Assembly: GCF_001194135.2 (NCBI RefSeq)
Contig: NC_068984.1
Coordinates: forward strand, 147,571,543 to 147,635,542
DNA: 64,000 nucleotides
Direction of reading: 5' to 3'
Origin: Octopus bimaculoides
Taxonomy: Eukaryota
The notes under the pieces are model-generated. The model was not told the DNA's origin, did not search any database, and worked only from the letters and a program-made list of their open reading frames with translations. Positions 12,342-34,677 of this stretch are shown here, piece after piece. A program made the position numbers and the translations under genes. Each line of letters starts with the position of its first letter. Position 1 is the stretch's first letter.

Positions 12342-12444
12342 ATGTATGTAAACAATCCTAACAGCATGAATTGTTACTATCCCCCGCCATACAATTATTC
12401 CTATCAGTATTACCAATCGCCAGTATATTATCAACCTGTCACAG
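12342..12444 (+). CDS. CAP1: Putative alternative first coding exon of CAP: MYVNNPNSMNCYYPPPYNYSYQYYQSPVYYQPVT
   Basis: ATG at 12342 (A at -3, in-frame TAA at 12330 upstream) and a second in-frame ATG at 12366. The frame is open and Tyr/Pro-rich, ends at a strong donor ACAG|GTGAGT (phase 1), and matches the phase of the acceptor at 14855. Confidence 0.6.
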
Positions 12445-12794
12445 GTGAGTTATCAATTTTTCTGTTTTATGGTAAATAATGCTGCCAGCCAAATATTCCA
12501 GTTGCAGTTTTTCTGTCTTATTCTGTTTCAAAGAGTGGTGAGGTGGGGTTCTATCAAATTTATTCACTGTATCTGTAACACAATATATTTAAGTAATGCA
12601 GCACATGCAGGTACATATGGCAATATACGTATGTAGTACAATGTGTGAATGTAATACAATATATGCTGGTATATGATGCAATATATGTAATACAATGTAT
12701 GACTCCTCTGATGTATATGCTTGATTTTCATGCCCTCCACCACCATCACATTCTGCAAGCACCTCCCCATGCTGAGGAGATGCTTGCACTGTGT

Positions 12795-12844
<50 letters not shown>

Positions 12845-14854
12845 TGCGTGCGTGTGTGTGTGTTGCTCAGCAGTTTTTAGCATACAATCAAAGAAGAAAA
12901 TGATTTGCTTGACGCAACACAAAGGTTCTGATTTATGATAGGGTCCAAGTTCAAATCCAGCTGAACATTTTCAATATTGAATGCAATCACGACTCTTCCC
13001 AAACGTATGGTTTCAGGTTCAGTCTCACTGTGTGNNNNNNNNNNNNNNNNNNNNNNNNNNNNNNNNNNNNNNNNNNNNNNNNNNNNNNNNNNNNNNNNNN
13101 NNNNNNNNNNNNNNNNNNNNNNNNNNNNNNNNNNNNNNNNNNNNNNNNNNNNNNNNNNNNNNNNNNNNNNNNNNNNNNNNNNNNNNNNNNNNNNNNNNNN
13201 NNNNNNNNNNNNNNNNNNNNNNNNNNNNNNNNNNNNNNNNNNNNNNNNNNNNNNNNNNNNNNNNNNNNNNNNNNNNNNNNNNNNNNNNNNNNNNNNNNNA
13301 ACACAGAAATGGAATAATTCAGGTGTGAAAGGTGATTTATGATTGTCAAGTGAAAAAAATGGCATCTTCACAAATAAATACATTCATTGCTTATATGGTG
13401 ATGGTGATGGTAAGTGGTGGTGATGGTGAGGGTAAGTGGTGGTGGTGTAGTAGAAGCAATAATAGCAGCACTAGTGTAGTTAGTGGTGACTTGTAACTTG
13501 TGCACTTTCTCTGCCTGTCATAGGAATGAATGTACAAGCTTGGCTGGGTGGTTAAGAAGTTTGCTTGCCAACCACATGGTTTCGAGTTCAATTTCACTGC
13601 ATCACATATAGCTTCTAGTGAAGTCTCGGATTAACCACTGTGGTTTTACCTGAGAAATTTGCTACACAGAAACTGTACTGAAACCTGTGTGTGTATCTTC
13701 ACATTGACCCTGCTTGGGCAGCAGTGATGGGCTTATGACCCCACCACCACCGCCACCATCACCACACACTTAAATAAACAATAGGTTTGCTAATTTGATG
13801 GTTCACTGGCGAGAAGACATGGAATAAAGTACCTTGGCCCCATCCACCTCTAGCTATTCCATTATACTTCCACCCCTAGCTATGCCCTAAACAAGGGGAG
13901 GGGACATGTTCATTCACACATCTCTAGACACACTTTGTTTCCACCAACTTCTGCTTTTCCTAGTATTTAGTACCTTTTTTGGGCAACTTTTTGTAGTTGT
14001 CACTTTTGGCTGGTGTTCTTGGGTGACAAGAACAGAATGACAGGTTGTGTGGTGACAGGGTGGGGAAGGTTGAGAAAAGGAATTATGTTGTGGTGGTCGT
14101 GGTGGGATTTTTGTAGTGTGAACTTATGTGATGATGGTGATAGTAATGGTGGTAATAAGTAATAATGGTGTTGAGGATAATGATGGTAGGTGGTTGCTGT
14201 CTGCTGTTGTTGGGGAATGGTGAGTGATCTGTTGATGATTGAATGGAGATGGGAACAGCGGTGAGAAAAGTTTGTTTTCTTTCTTTCTTTCTTTTTAGTA
14301 ATCTACCCCTCTTCTGGGTGTCCCGTTGTTAGTGTTGGTGTTGAGGGGTCATAGCAATTCAAATAATGCTTGTTGGAGTAATGGAAGAGGTTGATTTAAG
14401 GTGCAGTTGCCCTAAAGGTAATGATTATGTTAGAGAGAAGGAGGGAGAGAAAAAGCAATTAAGTAACCTTCCTCATTTACTACATGAGTGGGGGACTGGA
14501 GTGGGGCTGGCCTAGAAAAGAAAGTAGGATTATCAGCCTGTAGCTGCAACAACACTAGTGTGTGTGTGTGTGTGTGTGTGTTGCTTGAGTACCACACAAA
14601 CCAACTAATCAGGAGCTTAGTGTCCTGGACTTGGTGTAAGGGGTCAGAGAAGTTTTGTGATAGTTTTGGTAGAGTTTTGAGTTTGTTTTCATGTCACATA
14701 TACATGGGTACTTGTGTTAGTCACAGTCACAAAAAGCCATTGGTGGCTGTTGTGACACAGGACAGCAGTTGTACTGTAGGTGGTGGTGGTGGTGGTGGTG
14801 GTGGTGATGATGACAGTAGAGTTATTACAGGTAAAAGTGCTGTTTGTGTATCAG

Positions 14855-15097
14855 ATTGCAATGAGGGCACTGAGACTACTTACTACGAGACTATCAACAA
14901 CTACCAGGAAAGCCACCACTACGTAAACAATTACCCCAACTACGATACTATCAAGGACCACTACTATGACAATAGCAAGAGCAGGACTTCTATCAGTGAC
15001 GACGAGTATGACCTCTCCATTGATAAAATCTCACAACAAAAAGTGGGAATAGAAAAAGAGGAGGAGGAAGAGGAGGACAGCGATTATGCAGAAGTAG
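14855..15097 (+). CDS. CAP1: Putative alternative N-terminal exon of CAP: (D)CNEGTETTYYETINNYQESHHYVNNYPNYDTIKDHYYDNSKSRTSISDDEYDLSIDKISQQKVGIEKEEEEEEDSDYAEV
   Basis: Acceptor tgtttgtgtatcag|AT and donor GTAG|GTAGGT. The exon is 243 nt, phase 1-1, with coding-like codon usage (TAC/AAC/GAC). It joins in frame to both 12444 and 23129. Confidence 0.65.
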
Positions 15098-15229
15098 GTA
15101 GGTGTTAACACACTCTCTCTCCCATTGACCAACTTAACATCCGTAGCCCTCATCCTCTCTGCTCCAGAGATTCTGCTTACATGTAAATGTTGACTTCTTT
15201 GCAAGATTCACAATTTATAGTATTATCCA

Positions 15230-15262
<33 letters not shown>

Positions 15263-15757
15263 TTAACTGCATATGTATGTATGGAAGTGTCGAGAAGAAT
15301 AATGTATGTGTCTGTGTGTGAGTATGTAGGGATGTCTATGTTTGTGTTAATGATAAAGGTGTTTGTGGATCAACTTCTTTCTGTATATGTATGCTTACAC
15401 ACACACACACACNNNNNNNNNNNNNNNNNNNNNNNNNNNNNNNNNNNNNNNNNNNNNNNNNNNNNNNNNNNNNNNNNNNNNNNNNNNNNNNNNNNNNNNN
15501 NNNNNNNNNNNNNNNNNNNNNNNNNNNNNNNNNNNNNNNNNNNNNNNNNNNNNNNNNNNNNNNNNNNNNNNNNNNNNNNNNNNNNNNNNNNNNNNNNNNN
15601 NNNNNNNNNNNNNNNNNNNNNNNNNNNNNNNNNNNNNNNNNNNNNNNNNNNNNNNNNNNNNNNNNNNNNNNNNNNNNNNNNNNNNNNNNNNNNNNNNNNN
15701 NNNNNNNNNNNNNNNNNNNNNNNNNNNNNNNNNNNNNNNNNNNNNNNNNNNNNNNNN

Positions 15758-15799
<42 letters not shown>

Positions 15800-17119
15800 C
15801 ATATGCATGTGTATGTATATGCATATGTGTATGTATATATATGTTCAATATGTTCAAGGTGATGCTCCAGCATGGCTGTAGTATAATGCATGAAACAAGT
15901 AAAAGATCAAATGTCTGTGTGTGTGTATGTATATACACAGGCATATATCTACTAGTCGTATGCGTGTGTGTGTGTGTGCATCTCTTCGTTTCTTAGCTCA
16001 AACCTTTCTCCTGACATCACCTGTTGTCTTTCAACAACCTGTACCTGTCTGAATCGTTGTTCTCTACACATTCCTGGAATACTAATCATGTGTTGTGCGT
16101 GACTCACACCAACTAAACTAGCTTAGTCTCTACTGTTGGAGCTATTTGGCTCTTCTGAAAACCGGAGGTAATTTAGTCATGATGCAGTCGCAACAGTATT
16201 TAGCAAAATAACTTCTGCTTTTATACTTTCCAACCTATACTCAGTTGCCTTTCTCTCTCTCATGCCAGTATACTTCTTTCCTCCCAGTACTCTCTCTTCT
16301 CTCTCTCTCTCTCTCTCTCTCCTTGTCAAAGACACAATGTAATATGTACATTCTACCACAAACAGTGATACAAGGGATGTATTATATAATCAGTTACTTT
16401 GCTCAGCAGCCTGAATTTCCTAAAACAAATGACCATTTTCTTTAAGAGGCCACTAGTTTTCCAACCCTTAATTGTAACATAGCTTGTCCCATAAATAAAA
16501 TGGAGGCAAAAAAAAAAAAACACAGAAATCTGTTAAACTTTCCACCCAAAGAAAATTATGACAAAGCATCATGTATTGTAGCACCACATGAAACTGAATG
16601 AAAGACTCTGCCTCTCCCTCACCCAATCTCCTATTCTCTCTTTTTTGACATTTCTGATTATTAGTACAATTGTCGTCAAAGTCCCTTAGAAACCCATTGC
16701 TATTTTTAAATTAGTGATATTGTTTTAAATGCCTAAATAATTACAGTATGCTCCACCATAAAGTCAAAATAATGATGATGATGATCATCATCATCATCTT
16801 AATGCCCATTTTTCCATACTTGCACAAGTCAGAGTTTAATGAGGAAAGTTCTCTATGGCTGGATGCCCTTCTTGTTGCCAACCTTCACCCGTTACCAAAC
16901 AAGGTAATATTTCCCCATGGCCAGTTGTGTGTGTGACTGATTTGTCTTAGCATCACAAGATTGTTGTAAATGAATGCCATTCATTTCCAATATTCTGTGA
17001 AAGAGATTATTCTCCAGTTCTGCTGTCGGTTACACTGTATAACAAATTGACCATATTATCACAACCTTTGGACTGTCAAAAGCTGTTTATGTATTATTTC
17101 TGCATCATCTTTTTCACTG

Positions 17120-17460
17120 CACGGTGTCTTGGACAAGTGTCTTCTGCTTTAGCCCCAAGCGAATCAAATCTGTGTGAGTGGATTTGATAGATTGAAGCTA
17201 AAAGAACCCAGTCTTGTGTGTGTTACTACCTCCTTGCCTTCACTTCACATGATAGCTGTAAATGAGTGTCACCATCATACAAGCTGTTCATTTCCAATCT
17301 TCCATGAATACCTGTCTGATCATGGGGAAATGCTACCTGATTTGGAAACTGATGAGATTTAAAATGCAGGGCAACTGGCCATAGACAATCTTTCTCAATA
17401 AATTCTGTCTGACCCATGCAAACATGGAAAATTGGGCAATATAAAGATGATGATGATGAT
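17120..17460 (+). mobile_element. SINE copy (same family)
   Basis: GGACAAGTGTCTTCT...GTGAGTGGATTTG...tail (GAT)n. Confidence 0.7.
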
Positions 17461-17535
17461 TGCAATGATGGACTTTAATCAATGGGTATGACTCCAGCTG
17501 GTTCTGCCACATATCGTAGTTTCAATTCTTTGGAA

Positions 17536-17636
17536 TCTGATAATCTGATAATCTGATAATCAATAACCTATTGCTGAGCAAATATTGATATTGCTGAGCA
17601 AATATTGATATTGCTGAGCAAATATTGATATTGCTG
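17536..17636. repeat. Compound tandem repeat: (TCTGATAA)x3 followed by (TATTGCTGAGCAAATATTGA)x3
   Basis: Directly visible exact repeats. Confidence 0.95.
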
Positions 17637-18359
17637 CTATTTTGTTGTTTTGTGTTTGTTTTAGATAAAAAGGGAATAAATTTGCGCTTGTTAAAAGATG
17701 TCTTAAATGCTGCAATTTTAATTGCTTTACTTTTTGCCAAATGCCCCAACATAGTTTTGGATCTTATCCAACATTTTCTATTTGTATTACTACATTTATT
17801 AGGTTATAAGTTCCCAAACGCTCAAGAGTACATGCGCACACACACACACACACACACACTATATTTATATCTACATCTTTTAATCTTCAATCATCATAAT
17901 AGTAAGATTAGAAGAAAATTGTTCACTAATTGGTGAATGGCATTTTGAAATTACAATTGTTCTTACTGGGTCTTAAATTGAATGAATGAAGCTCCCTTTT
18001 TTTTATTTGGTTATGAAAGTCAACTGATAGCACCTTGGGCAAGTATCTTCTGTAGTCTTGGGCTGACCAATACCTGTAAGTGAATTTGGTAGATGGAAAC
18101 TGTGTGGAAGCCTATCATGCACACACACACACACAAGTATGTGTGTGTTTGACCCTCACCCACCACTGTTTGACAACCGTTGTTGGTTTGTTTACATTCT
18201 CGTAACTTAGTGGTTGAGCAATAGAAATTGATAGCATAAATACTGCCCTTTAAAAATAAATTACTGTTCGTGATTTGTCTGATTAAAACCTTCAAGGCAG
18301 TGCCCCAGCATGGCTGCAATCTAATGACTGAAACAAGTAAAAGAAAAGATAAACAAAAT

Positions 18360-18415
<56 letters not shown>

Positions 18416-19401
18416 TTAAATTTAAATGTTTTATAAGTTTGTATTCCTTGGTGGGGATGGGGCCAGTCTTCTTTCGAGAAGCAAGAAAAGTTTTACTTCA
18501 TACTTAGTCGAAGGGAACAAGAAAANNNNNNNNNNNNNNNNNNNNNNNNNNNNNNNNNNNNNNNNNNNNNNNNNNNNNNNNNNNNNNNNNNNNNNNNNNN
18601 NNNNNNNNNNNNNNNNNNNNNNNNNNNNNNNNNNNNNNNNNNNNNNNNNNNNNNNNNNNNNNNNNNNNNNNNNNNNNNNNNNNNNNNNNNNNNNNNNNNN
18701 NNNNNNNNNNNNNNNNNNNNNNNNNNNNNNNNNNNNNNNNNNNNNNNNNNNNNNNNNNNNNNNNNNNNNNNNNNNNNNNNNNNNNNNNNNNNNNNNNNNN
18801 NNNNNNNNNNNNNNNNNNNNNNNNNNNNNNNNNNNNNNNNNNNNNNNNNNNNNNNNNNNNNNNNNNNNNNNNNNNNNNNNNNNNNNNNNNNNNNNNNNNN
18901 NNNNNNNNNNNNNNNNNNNNNNNNNNNNNNNNNNNNNNNNNNNNNNNNNNNNNNNNNNNNNNNNNNNNNNNNNNNNNNNNNNNNNNNNNNNNNNNNNNNN
19001 NNNNNNNNNNNNNNNNNNNNNNNNNNNNNNNNNNNNNNNNNNNNNNNNNNNNNNNNNNNNNNNNNNNNNNNNNNNNNNNNNNNNNNNNNNNNNNNNNNNN
19101 NNNNNNNNNNNNNNNNNNNNNNNNNNNNNNNNNNNNNNNNNNNNNNNNNNNNNNNNNNNNNNNNNNNNNNNNNNNNNNNNNNNNNNNNNNNNNNNNNNNN
19201 NNNNNNNNNNNNNNNNNNNNNNNNNNNNNNNNNNNNNNNNNNNNNNNNNNNNNNNNNNNNNNTTTTTTTTTCACCTTTACACCTCTCCTCCCTTATTTTA
19301 CTTGTCAAAACTAAGATTAGAAACTTGCTGAAAATTTGGACTGGTGAATCTTCTCAAATAACTCCCTCCATGTTATTTTTTTAATTTTGTGTGCATATAT
19401 A

Positions 19402-19435
<34 letters not shown>

Positions 19436-20649
19436 ATGGTGTATTAAATGTGTTCCACAAGGCAGCAGTTAAATACTAGAAAACCTGACATACTTATGGG
19501 ACATGCGAAATTGAAATATAAACATATACATGCTCTTTCTCTCTCTCTCTCACCCCCACCCCTTCTCTCTCCAATTTTGTGTTGGTTTTCTGCACCAATC
19601 ACAGGTATTGCTGTGAAAAAATAGGGGTTTGTAGATGTAATGGCATGCGTCATTGAAACTGAATTAACAGAAGACTCTTGAAGGTGGAGCAATCTCGGTT
19701 GTTGTTGGGGAGGAGCATCTTAACTGAGGAGTTAGAGAAGATAATGGTAAAAAGATTATTCTGTGTAGCAGCTGCAGAGGTGGTGGTGGTGGTGCAGTGT
19801 TGCTATGTTTGCTATCTGTTCCCCTATCATCCCTTTATTTTCCCAACTCCAGATGCAAAACTGCTTCACAAGGTGGTGCTGCTGCTGCTGCTATAACCTG
19901 AGGTGATAAGTTTAGTTATAGGGTCCCAAGTTTGCATTGATTTGGCAGAGTTGTTTCTGGTCAAAGGCTGAAACACTTTTGCTGATCGTTCAATATATTG
20001 ATAGGCCCAGGCATGGCTATTGTAGTTTAGAAGCTCACTTTGCAACCATCTGGTTTTCGGGCCAGTCCCACTGGGCAAATGTCTTCTATAGATACCTCAG
20101 GCCAACTTTTGAGTGAATTTGCTTAGACAGAAACTGAAAGAAGTCCACTGTGTGTGTGTGTGTGTGTGTGTGTGTTCTCACCCACTCTCACTGCTTCACA
20201 ACCAGTTTTTGTTTGTTTACATTCCTGTAACTTAGCAATTTGGAAAAAAGAGACCAATAGAATAAGTACCAGGCTTTAGAAGTACAAAGGTTAATTTGTT
20301 TGACTAAAAACCAGTGAATGTTGTGCCCACAGTCCAGTGACTGAAATAAATAAAAGAAACAGACAATATTCTCTTAATTTGTAGTAGTGTATGTTTTAAG
20401 TCACTGCAAAGTGGATCCCTTGTTGAGGCTCCCTTCTTGATTAATTCTAATTTTGACATAAGACCAACAATTTTTAGGGGTTTCAGTTAGTTGATTTCTT
20501 TGGCTCCATTACTTCACTGGTCCTTTGTTTTATCTGATCAACCCCAGTACTTGATTGCTATGATATTTTATTGACTCCAAAAGAATGTAAGGCAAAGTTG
20601 GCCTCCATGGGACTTAAACTCAGTGTATAATCTTTGGTAGCAGGCACCA

Positions 20650-20890
20650 AGGCCACTCACTGTTCCATTATAAGGACACTCTATAAAGACTTAGAAGATA
20701 AATCTGAAGACACAGGAATCAGAAGCACTAAAGCCATCTCTGACTTTGAGGCAGCCAAGATGTACACCCTAAAAAAAGAAAAGGACCCACCACAGAGCCA
20801 AGCCCAGATGACAGAGATGACTATTGCAATGTCAGCCACTGAATTTGCAAATCCTGGATAAGTTTGAACTCCCACATGAGAGACAACATG
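20650..20890 (+). mobile_element. Degenerate RTE-like LINE extreme C-terminus (zinc-finger remnant)
   Basis: ICKSWISLNSHMR near 20840-20880 resembles CxSRIGLxSHxR. Confidence 0.45.
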
Positions 20891-21679
20891 ATCAAACAGT
20901 GAACTAAGGACACTATTCACATGTGTCTTGTTGTTGAACCCTCATTCATTGCATGTGACAAGAGAATCCAATATAATGGGTGACCTTATCAGCAATTTCT
21001 TTACAATATTTCATACATTTAAAATCGATCAGCCTGTTGTCTAGAATATTTTACAATGTAGATCAGGTCAGGTATTTGGAATGCACTGTTGCTGCATCCA
21101 TCATTTGTCAGCAATTCCTGGTGGATGATGTGTCTGCACCACTCAGGTAACAACCCTCTGACCCATGAATCTGTCTGGGGTAGTTGGTGATTTGTTTTAC
21201 CATGTCACAGTACAAGTCCTATCCCAATCTCTTTTAATCACCTTTTGACATTCAGAGGAAATGTCAAATCTATTGTTTGGCATGCCATTCAGTACATTAC
21301 ATTCAGGATATGACATGCCATTCAGTACATTACAAAATGTAGTTTTGGATAGAATGTGATCCTCAACTTTCCAACCTTAAATAAATCATTAATATACGTA
21401 GCTCTTTGTTGTTCCCCTCATTTTCACCTTTTGATGGTTTCTACTAAACTTCTCACATTCACACAAGTAGGAATGGTATTGTTTATCCAAACTTAGATTT
21501 CCTCATCAGTAATTATTCTGTGAAGCTGTGAAGACGACAAAGATGTCAAAAGTCTGTATGATGTCATCAGCCTTACTTAATGGAAGATGATGAAAAAATT
21601 TTAATCATTGTTTAATATTATATTTTTCTAGTTTACATCATTAATTCTTTATACATTAATCACCACACCCTTATTATCT

Positions 21680-22050
21680 AGGTGTGTAGTTAAGAACCTT
21701 GCTTCCCAGCCATGCGGTCTCCAGTTCAGTCCTACTGTTAGGCACCTTGGGCAAGCATCTTCTACAACTCTGGGCTAATCAATACCTCTGTGAGTAGATT
21801 TGGGAGATAAAAACTGAAAGTCTATTGCGTGTGTGTATACCCTTTTCTTGTGATGAGTGTTCATTGTTTTTTTTTTTCCATCTTCCCTGAAAACCATGTC
21901 TGGTTATGAGAAAATATCCCCTTGCTTGAAAATAGTTATGGTTTGGTGACAGGAAGGGCATCCAGCTGTAGGAAATCTGTCATAACAAATTCCATCAGAG
22001 CCATGCAAACATTGAAAAGTAGATGTTAATGCAATGATGATAGTGGTGAT
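21680..22050 (+). mobile_element. SINE copy (same family)
   Basis: Head, body and tail all recognisable. Confidence 0.75.
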
Positions 22051-23128
22051 ATTTATAGTTTAAACTTTTAAGACTCTTATAAACTGATGATGTTAATTCC
22101 TGCTTAATTGTGATAGTTTGTAGTTGGGTTTTCTTTCTTTTTTTTCTTTTTTTTTTGCCTTCAGGGAAGAACTTGAAAGAACAAACTTCTCACTTTGCTC
22201 TGTCACAACTTAAAACGCCTTGTGTATTTGTGTGTGTATTGAAAGGATTATGGAAGTAGTGAGATTAGCATGGAATTAATACAGTGTGCAAGTGTATGTG
22301 TAAGACTTACACCAAGCTGGACCACTGCTGGCTAGATTATATATTACATTTGTTTATCTAATCTTACTTCACCGATACTACTAACAAGAATTTGTTAATT
22401 ACTGCTTGACTAATGATTCTAGCTAGTATTTAATCATCCTTCTGACACAACAATTATTGTTATTATTGTTGTTGTTTTACTTCTCAGAGCATTTGGTCTC
22501 GTTTGCTCTGGCTGATTTTGTGAGAGCAGACAGCAGCCTGCTGTCAGAGATCTCCCACGGTCTCTTTCTGCACATTATAAGCTTTGATAATTAGTTGTTA
22601 ATTAATGTGGAAGATATTCAACACCCAAGTACCAATCTCAAAATCCTAGCTGTCCCCAGCAGAGCAGTTTTTTAGGCTTGTGCTGCTCTCATGTCAATTG
22701 CGATTTCTCTGATATATTTCTTGAACTTGGTTGTTAGTGCTTTTCTCTGACATATTTCTCAAATTTGGTTGTCAGTGCTATTATTGTTATTGTTATTATT
22801 ATTAGTTTTTCGTCATCTTTCAGTTTTGTTTCCATTTCTGGCCGTATCTTCCCCAACACTTAGGGCAATAAAGCTCATTGTATACATTGATTGGCCATTT
22901 AAAGGCAAGTACCCCCTCCCTCATCGCCCTCTTTCGATCTATAGGCACATACTCAGAGCAGGCCCATTTGTCTGGACCATTCTTGCCACTCTCACCCATC
23001 TCTCAACAAGTTTGTTAGAAGGCACTATTTTCCTCTCCATCTTCCCTTTCCACTTCAAGTTGAAGCTGTCTGTCTTCAACCGTTTCTTTATTAATAATAA
23101 TCTTTTTTTTTTCTTCTTTTCATTGCAG

Positions 23129-23232
23129 AAGTACTTTCACCGTTTGTAGTGGCTTACGATGACATTATCAAGGGACCCGTGGCAACATTTATTGCCCTCT
23201 CTTCCAAGATTAATGGCAATGTGAAGATCCAG
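23129..23232 (+). CDS. CAP1: CAP exon: (E)VLSPFVVAYDDIIKGPVATFIALSSKINGNVKIQ, start of the helical-folded domain
   Basis: Long pyrimidine tract + ttgcag|, donor CAG|GTAAGT. Resembles the CAP segment [28 protein letters not shown]. Confidence 0.93.
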
Positions 23233-25727: not shown

Positions 25728-25805
25728 GCCGCTATGGTGCAGGAAGCTTTCAATGCTCAGCGAAGTTTCCTTGTTCAAGTATCTCGCAGCAAAAAGCCAG
25801 CAAAT
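25728..25805 (+). CDS. CAP1: CAP exon: AAMVQEAFNAQRSFLVQVSRSKKPAN
   Basis: cttccag| acceptor, AAT|GTAAGA donor, 78 nt, phase 0-0; CAP-like A-x-x-V...QR-x-FL...KP pattern. Confidence 0.92.
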
Positions 25806-26540
25806 GTAAGAAGTTGTCTCTTTATTTTGTCGGTCACCTATACATTGGCCATTGTTTTACAAATAATAAAAATATATTGTTTCCTTGAAATATTTTTGTA
25901 TATTTAAAGATGGAACATGTACAACAACGACAACACTAATCAAAACTAAAACAATCAATTTACTGAAAGAAAAGATTACTTCTTATCTTTATGTAGAATT
26001 TGTCTACAACAGTAGATGTTTCCAAATCAGGTTTGTTGTGCCATCAATAGTTATTAAAACACCCTTGTTTAGAGAAGACCATTTTATGAAAAGAGGTGTT
26101 CAGTTACAAAATGCTCAGAACTGTTGCTTTGTGACCCCCTGTAGCAAATCACAGTGTCTAGTTTACAAAACTCTCAGCCATTTACTGCAAGCCAGCTTGC
26201 TGGGGAGTTCATAGGTTTCATTTGATGTTTACCCTGGCTGATAATTATCCTAAACAAGATGAAGTTAATATGTGTTGTCAATGTATTTGGTATTGCAAAG
26301 ACATGCAGCCTAGTGGTGAGGATGTTGGGCTTATGATCATTACATCATTGGTTCAATTCTTTGAGCAAGATATTTCATTTTGCATTGCTCCAGTTTACTG
26401 AAGAATAAGTACGAGCCTTCAGCTAGGAACACAAAGAGCTGCATTGAATACTGCTAAGCCTCCACTCCATCACTCTAGAATGATTTTTCTTTAACTGAAG
26501 GTTGATCTTCTATAAATAGCTGAGCCTTGGATCGTTCCTG

Positions 26541-26581
<41 letters not shown>

Positions 26582-26591
26582 NNNNNNNNNN

Positions 26592-26636
<45 letters not shown>

Positions 26637-26872
26637 GATGTCATGCTTAGTCAAAAACAGGATGATCAAGATTATGTCTATGTTTGTTCCTAACTTCATA
26701 CACACCTAAAACAGTGAAAGGACTATCCATGCTCTCAACTCATACTTGCCAGTGAGTTATGGCTCTGCTTTATTATTTGAAACTATTTTGCTAAAAACTG
26801 AAAATAACATTTCTGAATTTATTCCATGACTGTTTAAATATTGTTTTTTGTTTGTTTTTTTCCTCTTCTCAG

Positions 26873-26926
26873 GAGCAAATGAACCACCTTTTGAATCCAA
26901 CAAGCTCTAAACTGCAAGCTATTCAG
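26873..26926 (+). CDS. CAP1: CAP exon: EQMNHLLNPTSSKLQAIQ
   Basis: ttctcag| acceptor, CAG|GTAAGA donor, 54 nt, phase 0-0; matches the CAP LL-x-P-x-S-x-x-I/L segment. Confidence 0.9.
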
Positions 26927-27469
26927 GTAAGATGTCTTCATGTGTTCATCAGGATTTTACTGAGACAGGTTTTATTATGTACACTGCCTTATATGGCATA
27001 TGACCTTCATTTTGTGTTAGTGAGAAAATGCTGCTGTGAAAATTGGTTCTGTGTTTTTAGACTTCAGGTTTGACTAAAGACACAGGCATGGTCATAGATA
27101 GCTTGAGGTGTGGTTATGAATCCCCGTTATGTTAACCAGGGTGATTGATATTATACATCACTCAAGTAAAGATTTAACCTTATCACTTGGTGCCTTGGAT
27201 TCCTTTAGCAAAGTCCACCCTCTTACAAACTTTTGGTTCAGGATTTCAGTTTCAGGATACCTTCATCTCTTCTCCACCCCATAATCTTGGAGAACCTGTG
27301 AAGAATCATGGATGCTACCTTTCCCCTTGAATAAACAAAAAAAAAAAAATAGCTGAGCTGAGGTTACACAATATCATTCTCTACCCAACACTATCTCCAC
27401 CTAGTAGCCCCACCATAGTACCACCATCCTCTTTTTCACACATTACCGTGAAACTCTATTATACATTGC

Positions 27470-28590
27470 AAACCTATCAAAGGAAGGCTAACTGGCAAAA
27501 TAGCTTTTGTGTGTGGCAAATGCACAGGGGCAATAAACCCTGAAAATGTGTAGAAAACAGCTTCTGTCACATGCCAGGGGAAAAAAACTGGAAGTAGTTG
27601 ATAGCTTCTGTTACCTAGGTGACCAAGTCAGTAACTGGGGTGGATCTAGAATAAGAATAGGCTGCGCAAAGTACAGAGAGCTCCTACCTCTGCTGGTGAC
27701 AAAGGGCCTCTTGCTCAGAGTGAACGGTAGACTGTATGACGCATGTGTGTGAACAACCATGCTACATGGCAGGGAAATATGGGCCGTGACTGTTGAGGAC
27801 ATGTGTAAGCTTGTAAGAAATGAAGCTAATATACTCCACTGGATGTGTAATGTTAGTGTTCATACATGACAGAGTGTAAGTGCCCTGAGAGAAAAGTTGG
27901 ACATAAGAAGCATCAGTTGTGGTGTGCAAGAGAGATGACTGCAACTAGTATGGTCATGTGATGTGTATGGATGAAGACAGCTGTGCGAAAAGGTGTCACA
28001 CCCTAACAAGCCAAGTGAGACCATAACCGTGGCCTATGCCAGTGTTGCATAACCAGCCAATTCAAGAATACCCTTCAATCATTGGGCAATAAACTATGCT
28101 TGCGAAGACCTGTTCAGTCAAGTGAAATCATTGTCGCAGCCAATGCCTGTACCACCTGACTGGTATGTAAATAGCACCATTTGAGCATGATTCATGCCAG
28201 TCCCACCAGATTGGCTACAGTAGCCAATGTGCCATACGAATGTGGTTGATGCCAGTGCCACCTGACTGGTCCCATGCTGGTGGCATGTAAAAAGCACCAT
28301 TCGAGCGTGGTTGTTGCCAGTGCTGCTTGACAAGTTCCCGTGCCAGTGGCATGTAAAAAGTACCATTCGAGCATGGTTGATGCCAGGACCGCCTGGTGGC
28401 ATGTAAAAAGCACCCACTACACTCTCAGAGTGGTTGGCTTTAGGAAGGGCATCCAACTGTAGAATCCTTGCCAGATCAGATTGGAGCCTGATGTAGCCTT
28501 CTGGCTTGCCAGTCCTCAATCAAACTGTCCAACCCATGCCAGCATGGAAAGCAGACGCTAAACGATGATGATGATGATGATGACCTTCAT
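27470..28590 (+). mobile_element. RTE-type LINE 3' portion (same family as 53357-55190) with tandem-repeat 3' UTR and (GAT)n tail
   Basis: KGRLTGKIAFVCGKCTG, LEVVDSFCYLGD, GRLYDACV, LREKL...GHVM; tail GAAAGCAGACGCTAAAC(GAT)n. Confidence 0.88.
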
Positions 28591-28946
28591 TCTTATTTTA
28601 CAATTAATTTGCATTATGAATTTAAAAGGTAAAAATCTCTTTGGGGCAAAATTGACATCAATTCATTTACATCCTAAAGGATAGAGAGTTTCTTACAGAC
28701 TGAAAACAGCGGCAATTGTGTCTTTTGATTCCATTCTAAGAATAGCTAGAGATTAAACTACAACCACAGTGGACAATGGCTAGTAGTAGTCCTGAAGAAC
28801 TAGGTCATATTACTATTTACCCTCAATAAAATCTAGGTTTCTTTTTTCTTTCTTTAGAGGTTTATATATATATATATNNNNNNNNNNNNNNNNNNNNNNN
28901 NTATATATATACCTGTACATATATATGCATATACTCATTGATTATT

Positions 28947-28982
<36 letters not shown>

Positions 28983-28987
<5 letters not shown>

Positions 28988-29300
28988 TCCAGTATTTGTT
29001 AAAACAGTATAAGCCCACATCAAAAATAAGTAAATAAAACAAATGATTCTGATAAAATCCCCAACCAACACAATTATAACTCCAAATCTCAAAGGTTGAA
29101 TTAAAATAATTAATGAAAGACCTATTATTAATATCATATTAAAATATGAAAACATTTTAATCTATAACTTCCGGTGTTATTATTTTACTCTTAAACTGTT
29201 TCTTGTCCTTTCACCAAAAGTAAATAACTTTTTCAAATTAAATATATTAATAAATCATAACAATCGCAAGAATAATCTGTGTGAACTCACATAAACCCCT
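28983..29300 (-). pseudogene. NUMT: degraded mitochondrial DNA fragment with nad6 5' part, a possible trnP remnant and nad1 3' part
   Basis: In the invertebrate mitochondrial code the minus strand 29155-28983 reads MFSYFNMMLMMGLSLIILIQPLSFG...WAYTVLTNTGGL (ND6-like QPLS..G and W-x-Y...GGL). Minus strand 29259-29221 reads YDLLMYLIWKSYL, using TGA=Trp and ATA=Met (ND1 RYDxLMxLxWK motif). Confidence 0.85.
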
Positions 29301-30306
29301 CAACGGTCCAACCACCTTTGTTGTACAACATACATCATTCTTCTTGTTGCATTTGTCTAGCACACTCCTGTCTGGAATCTCCTGTCACTGAGGTATTATT
29401 AAGATGACTGAAGTTCATGTGAAATACATTCGTAAAATGCTGGTTTCAATTGATTTAATACTGAAAACCTATCTGACTAGTTTAAATCCTCACACTGTAT
29501 ACAAATAAGAAAAACAGGTTAGCAGAAATAAACCACAGTTTATTTCTGTATCAAGCCATATGCTCTAATGTAACCTATCTGGCACTGATCGCTCATTAGC
29601 CCTGTCTTGTGTGTCTCTTTCAAATGGACTTCCCGAAGTGATTTTGTGTTGTTGTTTTGTAAGCAGCTCTTCTTATGATGGTCTCTGTCAACAAAATCTT
29701 TATTATTTATATTATGAAGGTTTTTTTTATTACATTGTTGTTGTTGTAGGAGATGTTAGACAATCTTTTTTTAATGGTTATATTCCCACAATATATTTTT
29801 AGAAATGTATTGCATATGAGTGACAGAGAAGAGAAAGTAGTTTGTGAAAGTATGCTGTTTACGTTGAAGTATTGAGGGGACTCTATAAAGTAATTATTCT
29901 TTGAAGCTCTAAAATTTGGGTTGTATGAGTCTTGGGGAGTGTTGTAACCCTGAGAAAGAAAATCTTACTTAAGAAGAGATTTTAGAATTTTTATTGTGTC
30001 ACCATGTTTAATGCTGGTGAGACAATAAAACGGACAAAACCCACTGTAGAGCAGTTGGTAACAAGAGTATCCAACCAAAACCTTATCATATACAGCAACA
30101 AAGATTGGCAGCTTTTTTTTTTTGCTGTTATTGTGTGCTTTAGATGAAGGACTACAGTAAGTGCTGGAAAAGACTCGTCCAACATACGTCAACATGGGAA
30201 AATGAACATAAAATGATGATGGTAATTACATGTGAATAAATGCATCCATCTAGATAGGTGCACAACACTCAGTCATATATGTATAAACATACATCTTGTA
30301 TGTATG

Positions 30307-30344
<38 letters not shown>

Positions 30345-30348
<4 letters not shown>

Positions 30349-30720
30349 ATCATCATCATTTAATGTCCATTGTCTATCCTGGCATGAGTTAGACAGTTTG
30401 ACCCGGGCTGGTAAGCTGGAAGGCTGCAGCAGACTCCAGTCTGTTTTGGCATGGTTTTCTATGGCTAGATGCCCTTCCTAATGCCCACCACTCCGAGAGT
30501 GTAATGGGTACTTTTAGGTGCCACTGGCAAGGGTACCATTTGCGTGGCACCAATATCTGTCACAAGTGCGGTTTTGCTGTGCTTGATGGGTCTTCACAAA
30601 CATGGCATAATGCCAAATGGTCTCAGTCCTTTTCTCCCTGAGGCCTAATGCTCAAAAGAGTGCTTTTACATGCCACTGGCACAGGTGCCATTTGTATGAC
30701 ACCAGTATCTGCCATGACTG
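30345..30720 (-). mobile_element. RTE-LINE 3'-tail fragment
   Basis: Same tail consensus as at 3540-3900. Confidence 0.75.
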
Positions 30721-31179
30721 TGAATTTAAGTGTTGTGTATGTTCACTGTCTATGGCTACCTGGTATTATCCATGGTAATTGCACAATTGTCTTTGATGCT
30801 ACCTCAGGAATTCCTCAGTGTACATTGAGTATAAAAGAGACAGAAAATGGTATACAAGGGAAACTTAATTGTTCACGACGATTGTTTTGAGATGTCTTGT
30901 GTTGATCCGTTGTTGGTGGGGAAAGAACGCTAACAAAATGGTTTTATTAAATGTGAGCGAAACCAAGATCATTTAACAAGATAACGTTTATTACATCACC
31001 TGACGAAATGCTTCTGCCCTGAGGGGGTCCACCACAACTAGTTGTATAGTTTCCCACCCGCAAGGGATCAATGCAGGGTGTCCAAACGATCATTGGTAAG
31101 CCAAGAAGTTTCCAGTGCATTCCATTTTCCATTTCTATCATCTGTTATATCTATAGACACACACACACACACACAGGCA

Positions 31180-31585
31180 TGGTGTAGGCATAGATGTGTC
31201 GTTTTAGTTTCCTTCCTGACCATGTAGTTTTGAGTTCAGTCCCACTGCACAGCACCTTGAGCAAGTCTTTTCTACTATAGTTCCAGGCCAACCAAAGCTG
31301 AGTGGATTTGATAGATGGAAACTGAAAGAAGCCTGTCATATATGCATGCATGTGTGTGTGTGTTTGTGTTTCCTCTTGTCTTGACATCCTTTGGTGGTTG
31401 TAAACCAGTCCTACAAGTGAGGGTCTTCATTTCAAGTCTTCCATGAAAAATGTCTGGCTATGAGAAAAGACTTCCTTGCTTGGTAACGGGTGTTGGCAAT
31501 AGGTAAGGCATCAAGCCATAGAAAATCCATCCCCCAAAATTCTGTCTGACCCATGCAAGCAAGAAAAAGTGGACATTAAATGTTA
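31180..31585 (+). mobile_element. SINE copy (same family)
   Basis: Full head-to-tail match to the other copies. Confidence 0.78.
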
Positions 31586-32134
31586 GTGAGGAGATGCAGT
31601 ACTAATTTTTCTACATCACCGAGTAGACTTATTGACCTACATATAGAAGATAGTTATTGCATTTAACCTATTTATTTGTCTCTTAAATCCTGACTACTTA
31701 GGGAAATCATTCCATGGCCAACAGCAGTTAGAACTTCCTGCTAACCCAATGACTTTTCATTGGAATTTGGTTGCATTAATTATGTTTTTTTTCTCCTTTC
31801 CTGTCCCTCATCATATCGAAGGGAAAAAGTGTGGGAATATGGGTCTCCATCTCAGGCAGAAAATTAATCATTTATCTCAAAATAGAATATTATATTAAAA
31901 ATATAAATTAAAGACAAACTAAGAGTGCAACACTTTAGCATAGAAACTATTGTATTATTTTAGAATAGCTGATCAAAGCAAAAGCCACACTGTTAATTGG
32001 GAAATTATTGAATCATTGTGTGTATATGGGAATGTGTCTACATAAACTTGTATATATAAATAAATAAAACAGAAATGTTATGTAAAAATTTCCAAGTAAT
32101 TTTGTTTACCAGTTATATGTTCTGTCTCTTTCAG

Positions 32135-32224
32135 GAATTGCGTGAGAAAAACCGTAGAGATCCATACTTTAACCATTTATCAGCCATCAGTGAATCAATC
32201 CCAGCGCTTGGATGGGTAACTTTG
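32135..32224 (+). CDS. CAP1: CAP exon: ELREKNRRDPYFNHLSAISESIPALGWVTL
   Basis: tctttcag| acceptor, TTG|GTAAGT donor; hallmark CAP motif REKNR...FNHLSAISESIPALGWV. Confidence 0.97.
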
Positions 32225-32589
32225 GTAAGTTCTCATTTTTTATTTTACTTTCACAGAAATTTAAGCAGAGTTTTGGGAGTAGCTTAACTTTCCTAGTTTG
32301 TTGTTTGAGTAATTTTTAATGCCGTTTCTACAACTTTTAGTAGTGATCTTGGGGTAATGTTTAAGATGTTAATTTAACCCCTTTGTTTCTATATTTCTGT
32401 TAAAATATACTGTTTTTGTTTCAATATAGAAATGCTGTATTTGCTCAAGTCGCTTCCCCTAATTCACTGTTAAAACTTGGTACAAAATTTTTTCCATGCC
32501 AGTTTTTTCAGTTAAATTCTCATTGCCCTTTCTAGACTCATGGGAGAAATTGAAATTAGTGTTACACGTCGTCAAGAAATATTTGTACT

Positions 32590-32985
32590 AGGCATTACCA
32601 TGTTGTTAAGAACTATGCTTCCCAGCCACGTGCTTTTTGGCTCAATCTCAGTGTGTTGCACCTTGAGCAAGTGTCTTCTATGATAGGCCAGTGATGACCA
32701 GAGCTTTGTGAGTGGATTTGGTAGGTGGAAACTGAAAGAAGTCCACTCTGTTGTGTATGTATGTATTTGTGTCTCCTTGTCTTGACATCATGTGACAGCT
32801 GTAAATGGAAGTCATTCATTTTCAAATATCCTGTGAAAACATGTCTGTTCGTGGAGGAATATTACCTTATTTGGAAACAGATAAGAGTTGACAATAGGAT
32901 CGGGATCCAACTGTAGAAAACCTGCCTCAATAAATTCCTTCTGATCCATGCAAGCTTGCAAAAATGAACATTAAAACAATGAGGA
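32590..32985 (+). mobile_element. SINE copy (same family)
   Basis: Full head-to-tail match to the other copies. Confidence 0.8.
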
Positions 32986-33109
32986 TAACTATTCCTATAG
33001 GTTTAAGAGATGAACCCGACTTAAGGCATGTATTTACAGTTCAATCACCTCAGTCAGCTAGAATCAAGTATCTTGTTCATGCAATTAAAATGACACTGGA
33101 GTAAAATAT

Positions 33110-33425
33110 ACAAAGCCCAGTATACCCATCATGTATACCCAGTATACCCATCATGACTATCCGTCTGATAAGGGTACACCAGGCCCATGCATCATAACCA
33201 AATGTGATATGTGGTGACATAGTGATCTGATACCAAAATAAACAGTGCACGACCTTGCAGGTGGGGCCCAGTTAGAATTTTCTTTAGATTAAGTAGCTCA
33301 TCCGGTTCAAAAGGTCCCTGAATAAGGGTTGTTTAAGGTTGTTGAACGAAACACCCATGTTTCCAAAGGTAAATTATCCAAACCCCAAAGAATTCCTTTC
33401 GGCACATGGCTATGATTCTTCCCCA
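33110..33425. repeat. Interspersed repeat of unclassified type (GACCTTGCAGGTGGGGCCCCAGTTAGAATTTTC...AAAAGGTCCCTGAATAAGGGTTG)
   Basis: GC-richer block resembling an octopus interspersed repeat as recalled; only one copy in this window. Confidence 0.4.
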
Positions 33426-33440
33426 AAAGTTTGTTATTAT

Positions 33441-33664
33441 TTAACCCTTTGTTTGCCAACCTGGCTGAAACCGGCTCTGGCAATACAAATGTCTTGTTTT
33501 CATAAGTTTTGAATTAAAATCTTCCACCAAACCTTAGTCACAATTTATGTTCCTAACACCAGCTGAATGATAACCAAGTTATTTTACTAAATTCTTTGTT
33601 ATATTTAAAGTAATTGAAAGAAACACAGAGCATCTCAACAGGAATATGGTAACGAAATGGTTAA
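33441..33664. mobile_element. piggyBac-like MITE (TTAA target site, CCC/GG ends)
   Basis: TTAA-CCCTTTGTTTGCC ... GGTAACGAAATGG-TTAA with imperfect terminal inverted repeats. Confidence 0.7.
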
Positions 33665-33667
33665 GAC

Positions 33668-34558: not shown

Positions 34559-34641
34559 AATACTCCGGTATCTTACATCAAGGAAATGTCTGATTCAGCA
34601 CTGTTCTACACCAACCGTGTTCTCAAAGAATTCAAAGAGAA
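34559..34641 (+). CDS. CAP1: CAP exon: NTPVSYIKEMSDSALFYTNRVLKEFKE(K)
   Basis: ttgcag| acceptor, AA|GTAAGT donor (phase 2); hallmark YIKEM..FYTNRVLKE. Confidence 0.97.
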
Positions 34642-34677
34642 GTAAGTCTCCAGTTATTTTTATCCTCATCCACCAAA

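What the first reader, a model, noticed from the sequence alone, without database searches (positions are those of the whole stretch)
12342..23232. Apparent novel CAP isoform with a 115-aa Tyr-rich, acidic N-terminus (PPxY and multiple YxxI/V/L motifs) in place of the RLE oligomerisation segment
Seen: two exons with strong donors (12342-12444, 14855-15097) splice in phase 1 to each other and to the first conserved CAP exon (23129). They give MYVNNPNSMNCYYPPPYNYSYQYYQSPVYYQPVTDCNEGTETTYYETINNYQESHHYVNNYPNYDTIKDHYYDNSKSRTSISDDEYDLSIDKISQQKVGIEKEEEEEEDSDYAEV-EVLSPFVVAYDD..., with 20 Tyr in 115 aa. Established: canonical CAP/Srv2 starts with a short RLE-motif coiled coil needed for hexamer formation; PPxY binds WW domains; acidic pY-x-x-hydrophobic motifs (YETI, YDTI, DEYDL, EEDSDYAEV) are typical tyrosine-kinase/SH2 docking sites. 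Inference: this isoform could turn an actin-depolymerisation factor into a phosphotyrosine/WW-regulated scaffold with altered oligomerisation.
Basis: partly seen in the sequence, partly recalled or inferred. Interest (0 to 1): 0.78.

Follow-up and report, generated by a model that had tools for sequence, protein, structure and literature searches.

The report
Tyrosine-rich extra exon inside octopus CAP

Summary
The window is Octopus bimaculoides. CAP exons from 23129 to 63276 are 100% identical to XP_014791006.1.

An exhaustive HMMER search found one true relative. It is a 153-aa ORF on genomic contigs of another octopod, collinear with window 14009-15366. It begins 50 codons upstream at a shared ATG (14704), reading MGTCVS, a myristoylation/palmitoylation-type start.

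- All seven indels between ATG and donor are multiples of three; the flanks have mostly non-3n indels.
- dN/dS is about 0.43, and every O. bimaculoides Tyr motif is kept.
- Constraint ends at the conserved phase-1 donor at 15097.

So the real unit is exon 14704-15097.

The canonical RLE exon exists in XP_014791006.1 but lies outside the readable window.

Splicing to CAP exon 23129 is phase-compatible, and other invertebrates have CAP isoforms without the RLE segment or with lipidation-type starts. No transcript evidence was obtainable. A separate nested gene remains a serious rival.

The parts
14704..15097 (+). Conserved protein-coding exon, 131 codons plus 1 nt (phase 1). It reads MGTCVSHSHKKPLVAVVTQDSSCTVGGGGGGGGGDDDSRVITGKSAVCVSDCNEGTETTYYETINNYQESHHYVNNYPNYDTIKDHYYDNSKSRTSISDDEYDLSIDKISQQKVGIEKEEEEEEDSDYAEV. 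Proposed to be a first exon.
   Evidence: Orthologous ORF P0121 on contigs L001-L003 of another octopod. All 7 indels inside it are 3n, against mostly non-3n in the flanks. dN/dS is 0.43. GC by codon position is 0.46/0.25/0.59 for 14857-15097. No Pfam or PDB match.
14704..14721 (+). MGTCVS: an N-myristoylation-type start (Gly2, Ser6) with Cys4 as a candidate palmitoylation site.
   Evidence: Identical in both species; of the three nucleotide differences in codons 1-7, two are synonymous and lie within these six codons (GGT/GGC, AGT/AGC), and the third changes codon 7. Fits the PROSITE PS00008-type pattern in both. Acylation itself is inferred.
14779..14805 (+). (GGT)9 microsatellite encoding Gly9 inside the exon.
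   Evidence: The other species is 9 nt shorter here, an in-frame length difference.
14875..14952 (+). Most conserved core, TTYYETINNYQESHHYVNNYPNYDTI, with YETI, YVNN (pY-x-N type) and YDTI motifs.
   Evidence: 57 of 60 identical columns at 14879-14938, the highest in the alignment. Tyr contexts are conserved.
15052..15096 (+). Acidic tail EKEEEEEEDSDYAEV, ending in the conserved DYAEV.
15098..15103 (+). Splice donor GTAGGT (exon side TAG|), phase 1.
   Evidence: GCAGAAGTAGGTAGGTGTT is identical in both species. The first non-3n indel lies immediately after it, and identity then drops.
15106..15108 (+). TAA stop reached if the donor is not used (product would end ...AEVGRC).
   Evidence: The other species has a 1-nt deletion here and reads on for 19 unrelated codons.
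14588..14680 (+). Conserved non-coding block just upstream of the ATG, a candidate 5' UTR or core promoter. An out-of-frame upstream ATG at 14691 is also conserved.
   Evidence: 55 of 60 identical columns at 14588-14647, against about 76% for the upstream flank.
12342..12444 (+). Status open; probably not the main 5' end.
   Evidence: Present as described, with donor CAG|GTGAGT. 10 of 11 TAY triplets are in one frame. No counterpart in P0121. No similarity to the conserved exon beyond composition.
14853..14854 (+). It lies inside the conserved ORF.
   Evidence: Weakest pyrimidine tract of all acceptors compared: 10/18 against 12-18/18.
23129..23232 (+). First helical-folded-domain exon of CAP (E)VLSPFVVAYDDIIKGPVATFIALSSKINGNVKIQ, with a phase-1 acceptor.
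   Evidence: 100% identical to XP_014791006.1 residues 218-252. Strong acceptor, 16/18 pyrimidines.
25728..63276 (+). Remaining CAP exons: 25728-25805, 26873-26926, 32135-32224, 34559-34641, 35553-35658, (56366-56389), 57101-57279, 58012-58135, 60121-60203, 61858-62001, 63199-63276 including the stop.
   Evidence: tblastn of XP_014791006.1, 100% identity within the exons. CAP_N and CAP_C domains.
13035..13299 (.).
15413..15757 (.). Assembly gap flanked by (CA)n and (TA)n, 316 nt downstream of the donor.
18526..19262 (.). Assembly gap between the conserved exon and CAP exon 23129. It could hide an exon.

Best explanation
Shown: positions 14704-15097 (+) are a genuine protein-coding exon, so far found only in octopods. 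It begins at its own ATG with MGTCVS. It continues through a Gly run into a hydrophilic, acidic (pI 4.35) tyrosine-rich segment with no recognisable domain, and ends at a conserved phase-1 splice donor.

Inferred: it is an alternative first exon with its own promoter, inside the intron of more than 23 kb that separates the canonical coiled-coil ('RLE') exon of CAP from the first helical-folded-domain exon. It would splice to 23129 to give ...DSDYAEV-E-VLSPFVVAYDD....

The product would be a CAP with these features:
- It is N-myristoylated on Gly2 and palmitoylated on Cys4, and so held at membranes.
- It lacks the N-terminal coiled coil that makes tetramers or hexamers, and so would be left with only C-terminal dimerisation.
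- It carries about ten conserved Tyr in contexts resembling SH2-docking sites (YETI, YVNN/YVNS, YD(T/N)I, YYDN/YYNN, EYDL, DYAEV).

For: - Identity of the locus: CAP exons are 100% identical to XP_014791006.1, whose residues 1-217, including SIERLETAVVSLERVSTRLE, do not map to the window.
- Exhaustive HMMER over 1.84 billion representatives: the only true hit is P0121, E 5e-26. P0121 and two cluster mates lie on contigs collinear with window 14009-15366.
- Shared ATG and MGTCVS; of three nucleotide differences in codons 1-7, two are synonymous and fall within the MGTCVS codons.
- Indels inside the ORF are 3, 9, 3, 3, 12, 3, 3. Upstream they are 2, 1, 14, 3, 11, 1, 1, 2 and downstream 1, 5, 2, 13, 1, 20, 10, 2.
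- dN/dS is 0.43 overall and 0.34 in the Tyr-rich part. All O. bimaculoides Tyr are conserved.
- The donor and its surroundings are identical between species, and constraint stops right after it.
- Phase 1 matches exon 23129, and the junction codon is GAA = Glu, as in the canonical isoform.
- Precedent for short alternative first exons joined at this same boundary without the coiled coil: Cherax P0059, Simocephalus P0037, P0027/P0044, P0084, P0102, and cephalopod transcript L004.
- Precedent for lipidation-type N-termini on long CAP isoforms: Cherax MGSSCSC, oyster MMCCC, Tigriopus MLLCC. Toxoplasma gondii longCAP localises apically in a manner dependent on two N-terminal cysteines predicted to be palmitoylated (PMC6785269).
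Against: - No transcript or junction evidence could be obtained.
- The RefSeq model for this gene carries no isoform label and does not use this exon.
- The fused sequence built on that model is not in the 15-billion-protein collection.
- 8 kb, including 1.08 kb of gaps, lie between the donor and exon 23129 and could hold other exons or a poly(A) site.
- The exon's contig (13300-15412) is bounded by gaps on both sides, so its place and orientation rest on scaffolding.
- Protein-level constraint is modest: substitutions by codon position are 15/20/23.
- The contigs of the other species are unspliced. If they derive from RNA rather than DNA, they would show the donor unused.
- Acylation and phosphorylation are inferred from motifs only.
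Confidence: 0.45

Rival explanations
1. The exon belongs to an independent, octopod-restricted gene nested on the sense strand in the CAP intron. It would encode a small dual-acylated, Tyr-rich acidic adaptor-like protein. This protein would either end just after the 'donor' (...AEVGRC*, 134 aa) or continue in exons not recognised here or hidden in a gap.
For: - It has its own ATG and a conserved upstream block.
- Reading through gives a stop three codons later in O. bimaculoides.
- No annotated CAP isoform uses it.
- 1.08 kb of gaps and several phase-1-open acceptor candidates lie before 23129.
- Myristoylated Tyr-motif adaptors exist as a class (FRS2-type; my own knowledge).
Against: - The C-terminus after AEV is not conserved: a 1-nt indel at the stop, and GRC* against GRC plus 19 unrelated residues. 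The donor sequence, by contrast, is perfectly conserved.
- No AATAAA or ATTAAA occurs in the 316 readable nt after the donor; the first lies at 16494, beyond the gap.
- No candidate downstream exon shows any sign of coding.
Confidence: 0.3
2. The reader's model holds, alone or alongside the MGTCVS start. Transcription would start upstream of 12342. Exon 12342-12444 (MYVNN...PPPY...) would splice to an internal acceptor at 14855, making the conserved exon a hybrid first/internal exon and giving the 115-aa N-terminus with the PPxY.
For: - Consensus donor CAG|GTGAGT and A at -3 of the ATG.
- 10 of 11 TAY triplets are in one frame, unlike the neighbouring TA-rich DNA.
- It is one of only a handful of non-microsatellite Tyr-rich ORF stretches in 64 kb, 2.3 kb upstream on the same strand as another, the conserved exon.
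- The AG at 14854 is conserved.
Against: - The homologue has no counterpart of residues 1-34 and instead continues the ORF upstream to a shared ATG.
- 14704-14854 keeps the frame with 3n indels only.
- Acceptor 14855 has the poorest pyrimidine tract compared.
- There is no similarity between the two exons beyond composition: 410 of 500 shuffles score as high.
- A gap and a contig boundary lie between them.
Confidence: 0.15
3. Nothing functional is made. Either the ORF is an unexpressed or recently dead relic that has not yet decayed between two close species, or its position next to CAP is a scaffolding artefact.
For: - The flanks are themselves 76-83% identical, so the species are close.
- There is no third-position excess of substitutions.
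- It is an orphan with no Pfam, PDB or other homologue.
- It sits on a small contig between two gaps.
Against: - Seven of seven indels are in frame, against 1 of 8 upstream and 0 of 8 downstream.
- No stop has arisen in 131 codons despite about 58 substitutions.
- ATG, MGTCVS, all O. bimaculoides Tyr and the donor are kept.
- There is clear codon-position GC periodicity.
Confidence: 0.1

Closest known systems
CAP isoforms without the N-terminal coiled coil, made from short alternative first exons (predicted in Cherax quadricarinatus, Simocephalus, Macrosteles, Scirpophaga and unnamed transcriptomes; also a cephalopod transcript, L004)
   Same: A different 5' coding exon is joined at exactly the boundary before the helical folded domain (...|V.PFV.AYDD), and the RLE-type segment is omitted.
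   Different: Those N-termini are only 5-10 residues long (MTEECT, MNQVG, MPEEALT, MECSDG). Here it would be 131 residues, with an acylation-type start and conserved Tyr motifs. The join to CAP is not shown for the octopus exon.
Toxoplasma gondii longCAP (PMC6785269)
   Same: A CAP isoform whose extra N-terminus carries lipidation sites and localises the protein to a membrane site, alongside a cytosolic isoform.
   Different: It is made by alternative translation initiation, not an alternative exon. It depends on palmitoylation of Cys6 and Cys8 only. It has no Tyr-rich region and no sequence relationship, and apicomplexan CAP lacks the N-terminal half altogether.
Long N-terminally extended CAP isoforms of molluscs and crustaceans (XP_014791006.1 MGLVCLEQ..., oyster MMCCCAMS..., Cherax MGSSCSC..., Tigriopus MLLCCSW...)
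   Same: Gly2- or Cys-rich starts suggest that lipid-anchored CAP isoforms recur in invertebrates.
   Different: Those extensions precede and keep the RLE coiled coil. They are Lys/Glu/Ser-rich rather than Tyr-rich, and show no similarity to this exon.
SH4-type dual acylation signals and myristoylated docking proteins (Src-family kinases, G-alpha i, FRS2/SNT; my own knowledge)
   Same: A Met-Gly start with Ser at position 6 and a nearby Cys, followed in FRS2 by multiple pY-x-N and pY-x-x-hydrophobic docking sites.
   Different: No kinase, PTB or other domain is present and there is no sequence homology. This is a resemblance of motifs only.

Membership tests
CAP/Srv2 (host gene) | Helical folded domain (Pfam CAP_N) and CARP/beta-helix domain (CAP_C) | tested here: met
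   XP_014791006.1 scores CAP_N 1e-63 and CAP_C 2e-60. Its exons map at 100% identity to 23129-63276.
CAP/Srv2 (host gene) | N-terminal coiled coil (RLE-type heptads) used for oligomerisation | tested here: met
   Present in the canonical product (MSAEQMIKSIERLETAVVSLERVSTRLE). Its exon is not in the readable window, so it is inferred to lie upstream of position 1.
CAP/Srv2 (host gene) | Pro-rich region and WH2 motif between the two halves | tested here: inconclusive
   Absent from the RefSeq model, which has the 8-residue ILQKTNAC exon instead, and not found in readable sequence. It may lie in a gap.
CAP isoform (the claim that the exon is part of CAP) | Exon spliced to CAP exons in a transcript | not testable with these tools
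   No octopod transcript data were reachable: the only octopod CAP in the protein collection is the RefSeq model. Same strand, phase 1 = phase 1 and a conserved donor are compatible.
CAP isoform lacking the coiled coil | No heptad/RLE segment between the start and the helical folded domain | tested here: met
   There is no R-[LIVM]-[ED] motif in the 131 residues (sequence). This holds only if the splice to 23129 is real.
N-myristoylated, palmitoylated (SH4-type) proteins | M-G-{EDRKHPFYW}-x-x-[STAGCN]-{P} at the extreme N-terminus, with a nearby Cys | tested here: met
   MGTCVSH and MGTCVSQ both fit, with Cys4 present and conserved.
N-myristoylated, palmitoylated (SH4-type) proteins | Actual attachment of myristate or palmitate, and use of this ATG | not testable with these tools
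   Needs metabolic labelling or mass spectrometry. An out-of-frame upstream ATG at 14691 may lower use of this ATG.
Phosphotyrosine docking/adaptor proteins (FRS2, Dok, LAT/PAG type) | Several Tyr in SH2-type contexts, conserved | tested here: met
   All 10 O. bimaculoides Tyr are conserved (the other species has 11). These include YETI, YVN(N/S), YD(T/N)I, YY(D/N)N, EYDL and DYAEV. This is pattern only.
Phosphotyrosine docking/adaptor proteins (FRS2, Dok, LAT/PAG type) | Family-defining domain (PTB, PH or transmembrane helix) or sequence homology | tested here: not met
   No Pfam family at E<=1. No homologue other than the octopod orthologue. No significant PDB match (best E 0.018).
WW-domain ligands (PPxY) | A PPxY motif in an expressed, conserved part of the protein | tested here: inconclusive
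The conserved exon has none.

The most novel reading that the evidence does not exclude
Octopods have evolved a lineage-specific alternative promoter and first exon in CAP. It would produce a membrane-anchored (myristoyl plus palmitoyl), coiled-coil-less CAP whose 130-residue acidic linker is a multi-site phosphotyrosine docking platform (Grb2/Drk-type YxN and Src-type YExI sites). That would couple receptor or Src-family tyrosine-kinase signalling directly to cofilin-dependent actin turnover at the plasma membrane.
Probability: 0.3. Interest if true: 0.65.

Novelty: new variant of a known kind. Interest (0 to 1): 0.42.

Why it matters
CAP is a core, conserved recycler of actin, and the activity of its N-terminal half depends on coiled-coil oligomerisation (PMC6888645). 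An isoform that swaps that coiled coil for a lipid anchor and a tyrosine-motif linker would be a natural experiment on what oligomerisation is for. Membrane clustering could substitute for it. It would also be a direct route from tyrosine-kinase signalling to actin disassembly.

If the exon is instead a separate nested gene, it is an orphan, octopod-restricted, lipid-anchored adaptor-like protein. That is of more modest interest.

In practical terms, the current gene model of this locus is incomplete.

Tried and rejected
- Two word-indexed protein searches that included CAP exon sequence found nothing or only P0121. Both missed XP_014791006.1, which shares 35-61 identical residues with the query. 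These negatives are therefore unreliable and I did not use them as evidence of absence.
- A regex for RLE in all forward frames of 1-23200 and tblastn of XP_014791006.1 residues 1-217 found no canonical exon in readable sequence.
- The second HMMER hit, P0122, is a 1938-aa repeat protein with 11 short matching stretches; I take it to be a composition match on its recurring NNYPSY-type repeats and rejected it.
- Literature searches for the run accessions, to learn the species and library type of L001-L003, found nothing relevant. A search for octopus CAP found nothing useful.
- No TE or repeat origin for either exon: no other copy in the window.
- A scan of 15120-23129 for strong phase-1 acceptors found 11 sites, 6 with at least 25 open codons. 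None apart from 23129 looked coding, and this is not decisive.
- A poly(A) signal scan was not decisive because of the gap.
- I ran no further search on alternative-start variants of the ORF, judging the chance of success too low for its cost.

Full report
**1. What the window is.** A protein search with the concatenated exons returned XP_014791006.1, 'adenylyl cyclase-associated protein 1-like [Octopus bimaculoides]', 598 aa (P0001). Its exons map back at 100% identity:
- 23129-23232, 25728-25805, 26873-26926, 32135-32224, 34559-34641, 35553-35658
- a tiny 56366-56389
- 57101-57279, 58012-58135, 60121-60203, 61858-62001, 63199-63276

So the window is O. bimaculoides. The canonical protein does have the coiled-coil segment (...MSAEQMIKSIERLETAVVSLERVSTRLENIANTSGKLVNTGNSE|EVLSPFVVAYDD). 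However, residues 1-217 map nowhere in the window, and no RLE-type ORF exists in 1-23200. The model is not flagged as corrected. I therefore infer that those exons lie upstream of the window, so the intron before 23129 is longer than 23 kb and contains the finding.

**2. The gaps, tested first.** Gaps lie at 13035-13299, 15413-15757 and 18526-19262, all within the proposed introns. No claimed exon or reading frame crosses a gap. But each of the three 'exons' is on a different contig: 9052-13034, 13300-15412 and 19263-25337. Order and strand therefore rest on scaffolding. The gaps total 1.35 kb and could hide exons. Continuity is independently confirmed only for 14009-15366.

**4. What the Tyr-rich exon really is.**

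This is P0121, 153 aa, E 5e-26, matching query residues 33-118 only. A second hit I take to be a composition match to a repeat protein.

P0121 and two cluster mates are ORFs on 1.1-1.4 kb Logan contigs from three runs of one project (SRR11869391, SRR11869384, SRR11869385). L001 and L002 were aligned and are collinear with window 14284-15366 and 14009-15366; L003 was retrieved but not aligned. Aligned columns are about 84-85% identical, non-coding flanks included, and both aligned contigs end in what I recognise, from memory, as an abundant octopus repeat. They are therefore unspliced sequence of a closely related octopod. I could not establish whether from DNA or RNA.

P0121 starts MGTCVSQSPKTPLVAV....

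Evidence that 14704-15097 is coding:
- The seven indels between ATG and donor are 3, 9, 3, 3, 12, 3 and 3 nt. The upstream flank has 2, 1, 14, 3, 11, 1, 1, 2 and the downstream flank 1, 5, 2, 13, 1, 20, 10, 2.
- The frame stays open in both species from the same ATG. In the other species a stop lies 22 codons upstream of it.
- Nei-Gojobori dN/dS is 0.43: 0.67 for residues 1-50 and 0.34 for 51-131.
- GC by codon position in 14857-15097 is 0.46, 0.25, 0.59.
- Of the three nucleotide differences in codons 1-7, two are synonymous and lie within the MGTCVS codons; the third changes codon 7 (His to Gln).

Constraint is modest, with no third-position excess of substitutions, as is usual for low-complexity linkers.

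Coding constraint ends at the donor. GCAGAAGTAGGTAGGTGTT is identical in both species. Immediately after it comes a 1-nt indel, and O. bimaculoides reads GRC-stop while the other species reads GRC plus 19 unrelated residues. Identity then falls.

The exon is unique in the window.

In favour:
- A consensus donor, with A at -3 of the ATG.
- 10 of 11 TAY triplets in one frame, whereas neighbouring TA-rich DNA shows no frame bias.
- Its position 2.3 kb upstream of another rare non-microsatellite Tyr-rich ORF.

Against:
- No counterpart in the homologue, which instead continues the ORF upstream.
- In-frame conservation of 14704-14854.
- The weakest acceptor of all those compared, 10/18 pyrimidines.
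- No similarity to the conserved exon beyond composition.
- A contig boundary between the two.

I rate it at about 15-25% as a real, possibly alternative, 5' exon. The PPxY/WW-domain idea depends entirely on it.

**6. Is the conserved exon part of CAP?** Compatible facts:
- Same strand.
- A conserved donor in phase 1 meets the phase-1 acceptor at 23129, which is the strongest acceptor in the interval.
- The junction codon is G|AA = Glu, the same as in the canonical isoform.

Precedent among the 120 CAP homologues retrieved:
- Several have a short alternative first exon joined at exactly this boundary with no RLE segment: Cherax P0059 MTEECT|VPFVLAYDD, from the same locus tag as the long P0081; Simocephalus P0037; P0027/P0044; P0084; P0102.
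- A cephalopod transcript contig (L004) joins the long N-terminal extension directly to the helical domain.
- Several long isoforms begin with lipidation-type motifs: Cherax MGSSCSC, oyster MMCCCAMS, Tigriopus MLLCCSW, and XP_014791006.1 itself MGLVCLEQ.
- In Toxoplasma gondii, a long CAP isoform with two N-terminal cysteines predicted to be palmitoylated localises apically, and mutating those cysteines makes it cytosolic (PMC6785269).

Against or missing:
- No transcript evidence was obtainable. The only octopod CAP in the protein collection is the RefSeq model, so the absence of a fused protein says little.
- RefSeq gives no isoform using this exon.
- The exon could continue into unrecognised exons or end nearby. 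Stop TAA lies at 15106-15108. No poly(A) signal occurs in the 316 readable nt before the gap, and the first is at 16494.

**7. Mechanism proposed (inferred).** Translation from ATG 14704 gives MGTCVS. Gly2 with Ser6 fits the N-myristoyltransferase consensus, and Cys4 is a typical palmitoylation partner. Both are conserved. This predicts stable attachment to the cytosolic face of membranes.

The following roughly 125 residues are hydrophilic and acidic (pI 4.35, GRAVY -0.97) with no recognisable domain. The product carries ten Tyr, all conserved, in the contexts YYETI, NYQES, HYVN(N/S), NY(P/S)N, NYD(T/N)I, HYY(D/N)N, EYDLS and DYAEV. YxN is the Grb2-type motif and YExI the Src-type motif (established knowledge). 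Nothing here shows phosphorylation.

If joined to 23129, the isoform lacks the coiled coil. Work on human CAP1 and CAP2 shows that monomeric N-terminal halves are the least active and that activity rises with oligomer order (PMC6888645). Such an isoform would therefore be a weak promoter of severing in solution unless membrane clustering or docking compensates. C-terminal dimerisation would remain.

My estimates:
- The exon is coding: about 0.85-0.9.
- It is an alternative first exon of CAP starting at MGTCVS: about 0.45.
- It is a nested independent gene: about 0.3.
- It is non-functional or an artefact: about 0.1.

It is a new variant of known kinds (CAP isoforms without the coiled coil; lipid-anchored CAP isoforms), not a new category.

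Noticed in passing
window 56366-56389 and 35659-57100: The RefSeq model XP_014791006.1 bridges the two halves of CAP with an 8-residue micro-exon (ILQKTNAC) and lacks the Pro-rich and WH2 regions that cephalopod homologues have. No convincing exon for them is in readable sequence; a PPPPPPPP ORF at 37484-37552 is doubtful. They may lie in a gap (42355-42364 or 52574-53356), or the model may be wrong.
   Followed up: partly
L004 (Logan SRR24189503 contig, 2027 nt), positions 1-560: A cephalopod-like CAP transcript in which the long Lys/Ser-rich N-terminal extension runs straight into the helical folded domain (...SLNSEMECSDGV|VAPFVVAYDD) with no RLE coiled-coil segment. Its 5' end has no ATG before MECSDG. 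This is an isoform without the coiled coil seen in a transcript, in one contig only.
   Followed up: partly
P0081, P0016, P0050, P0104, P0001 (proteins): Long CAP isoforms of crustaceans and molluscs begin with acylation-type motifs (MGSSCSCTKDGS, MMCCCAMSDDDE, MLLCCSWKND, MGKTKSKL, MGLVCLEQ). This suggests that lipid-anchored CAP isoforms are widespread in invertebrates. I know of no experimental study outside Toxoplasma.
   Followed up: no
window 50871-51551 (-), 53357-53718 (-), 54218-54556 (-): ORFs of retrotransposon type in the large CAP intron. Matches to reverse transcriptase (E 8e-4) and PHD finger (E 2e-4) are below the Pfam cut-offs, and one ORF is interrupted by the gap at 52574-53356.
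   Followed up: partly
window 14691-14720: An out-of-frame upstream ATG (ATGTCACATATACATGGGTACTTGTGTTAG, a 9-codon uORF) overlaps the MGTCVS start codon. It is conserved in the other octopod and could modulate translation if the transcript starts upstream of it.
   Followed up: no
window 14779-14805: A (GGT)9 microsatellite encodes Gly9 inside the conserved exon. The other species has a 9-nt shorter, different sequence here, so this is a likely site of length polymorphism.
   Followed up: no
tool behaviour: The word-indexed protein search failed to return XP_014791006.1 although the queries contained 35 and 61 residues identical to it. In one search it also missed P0121. Negative results from that tool for short or low-complexity queries should not be trusted.
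   Followed up: yes
window 15835-15906/18273-18344, 18030-18075/21742-21787, 18164-18210/20189-20235, 9119-9163/21943-21987: There are several diverged copies of an abundant octopus interspersed repeat in the intron. Microsatellites flank the gap at 15413-15757: (CA)n on one side and (TA)n on the other.
   Followed up: no
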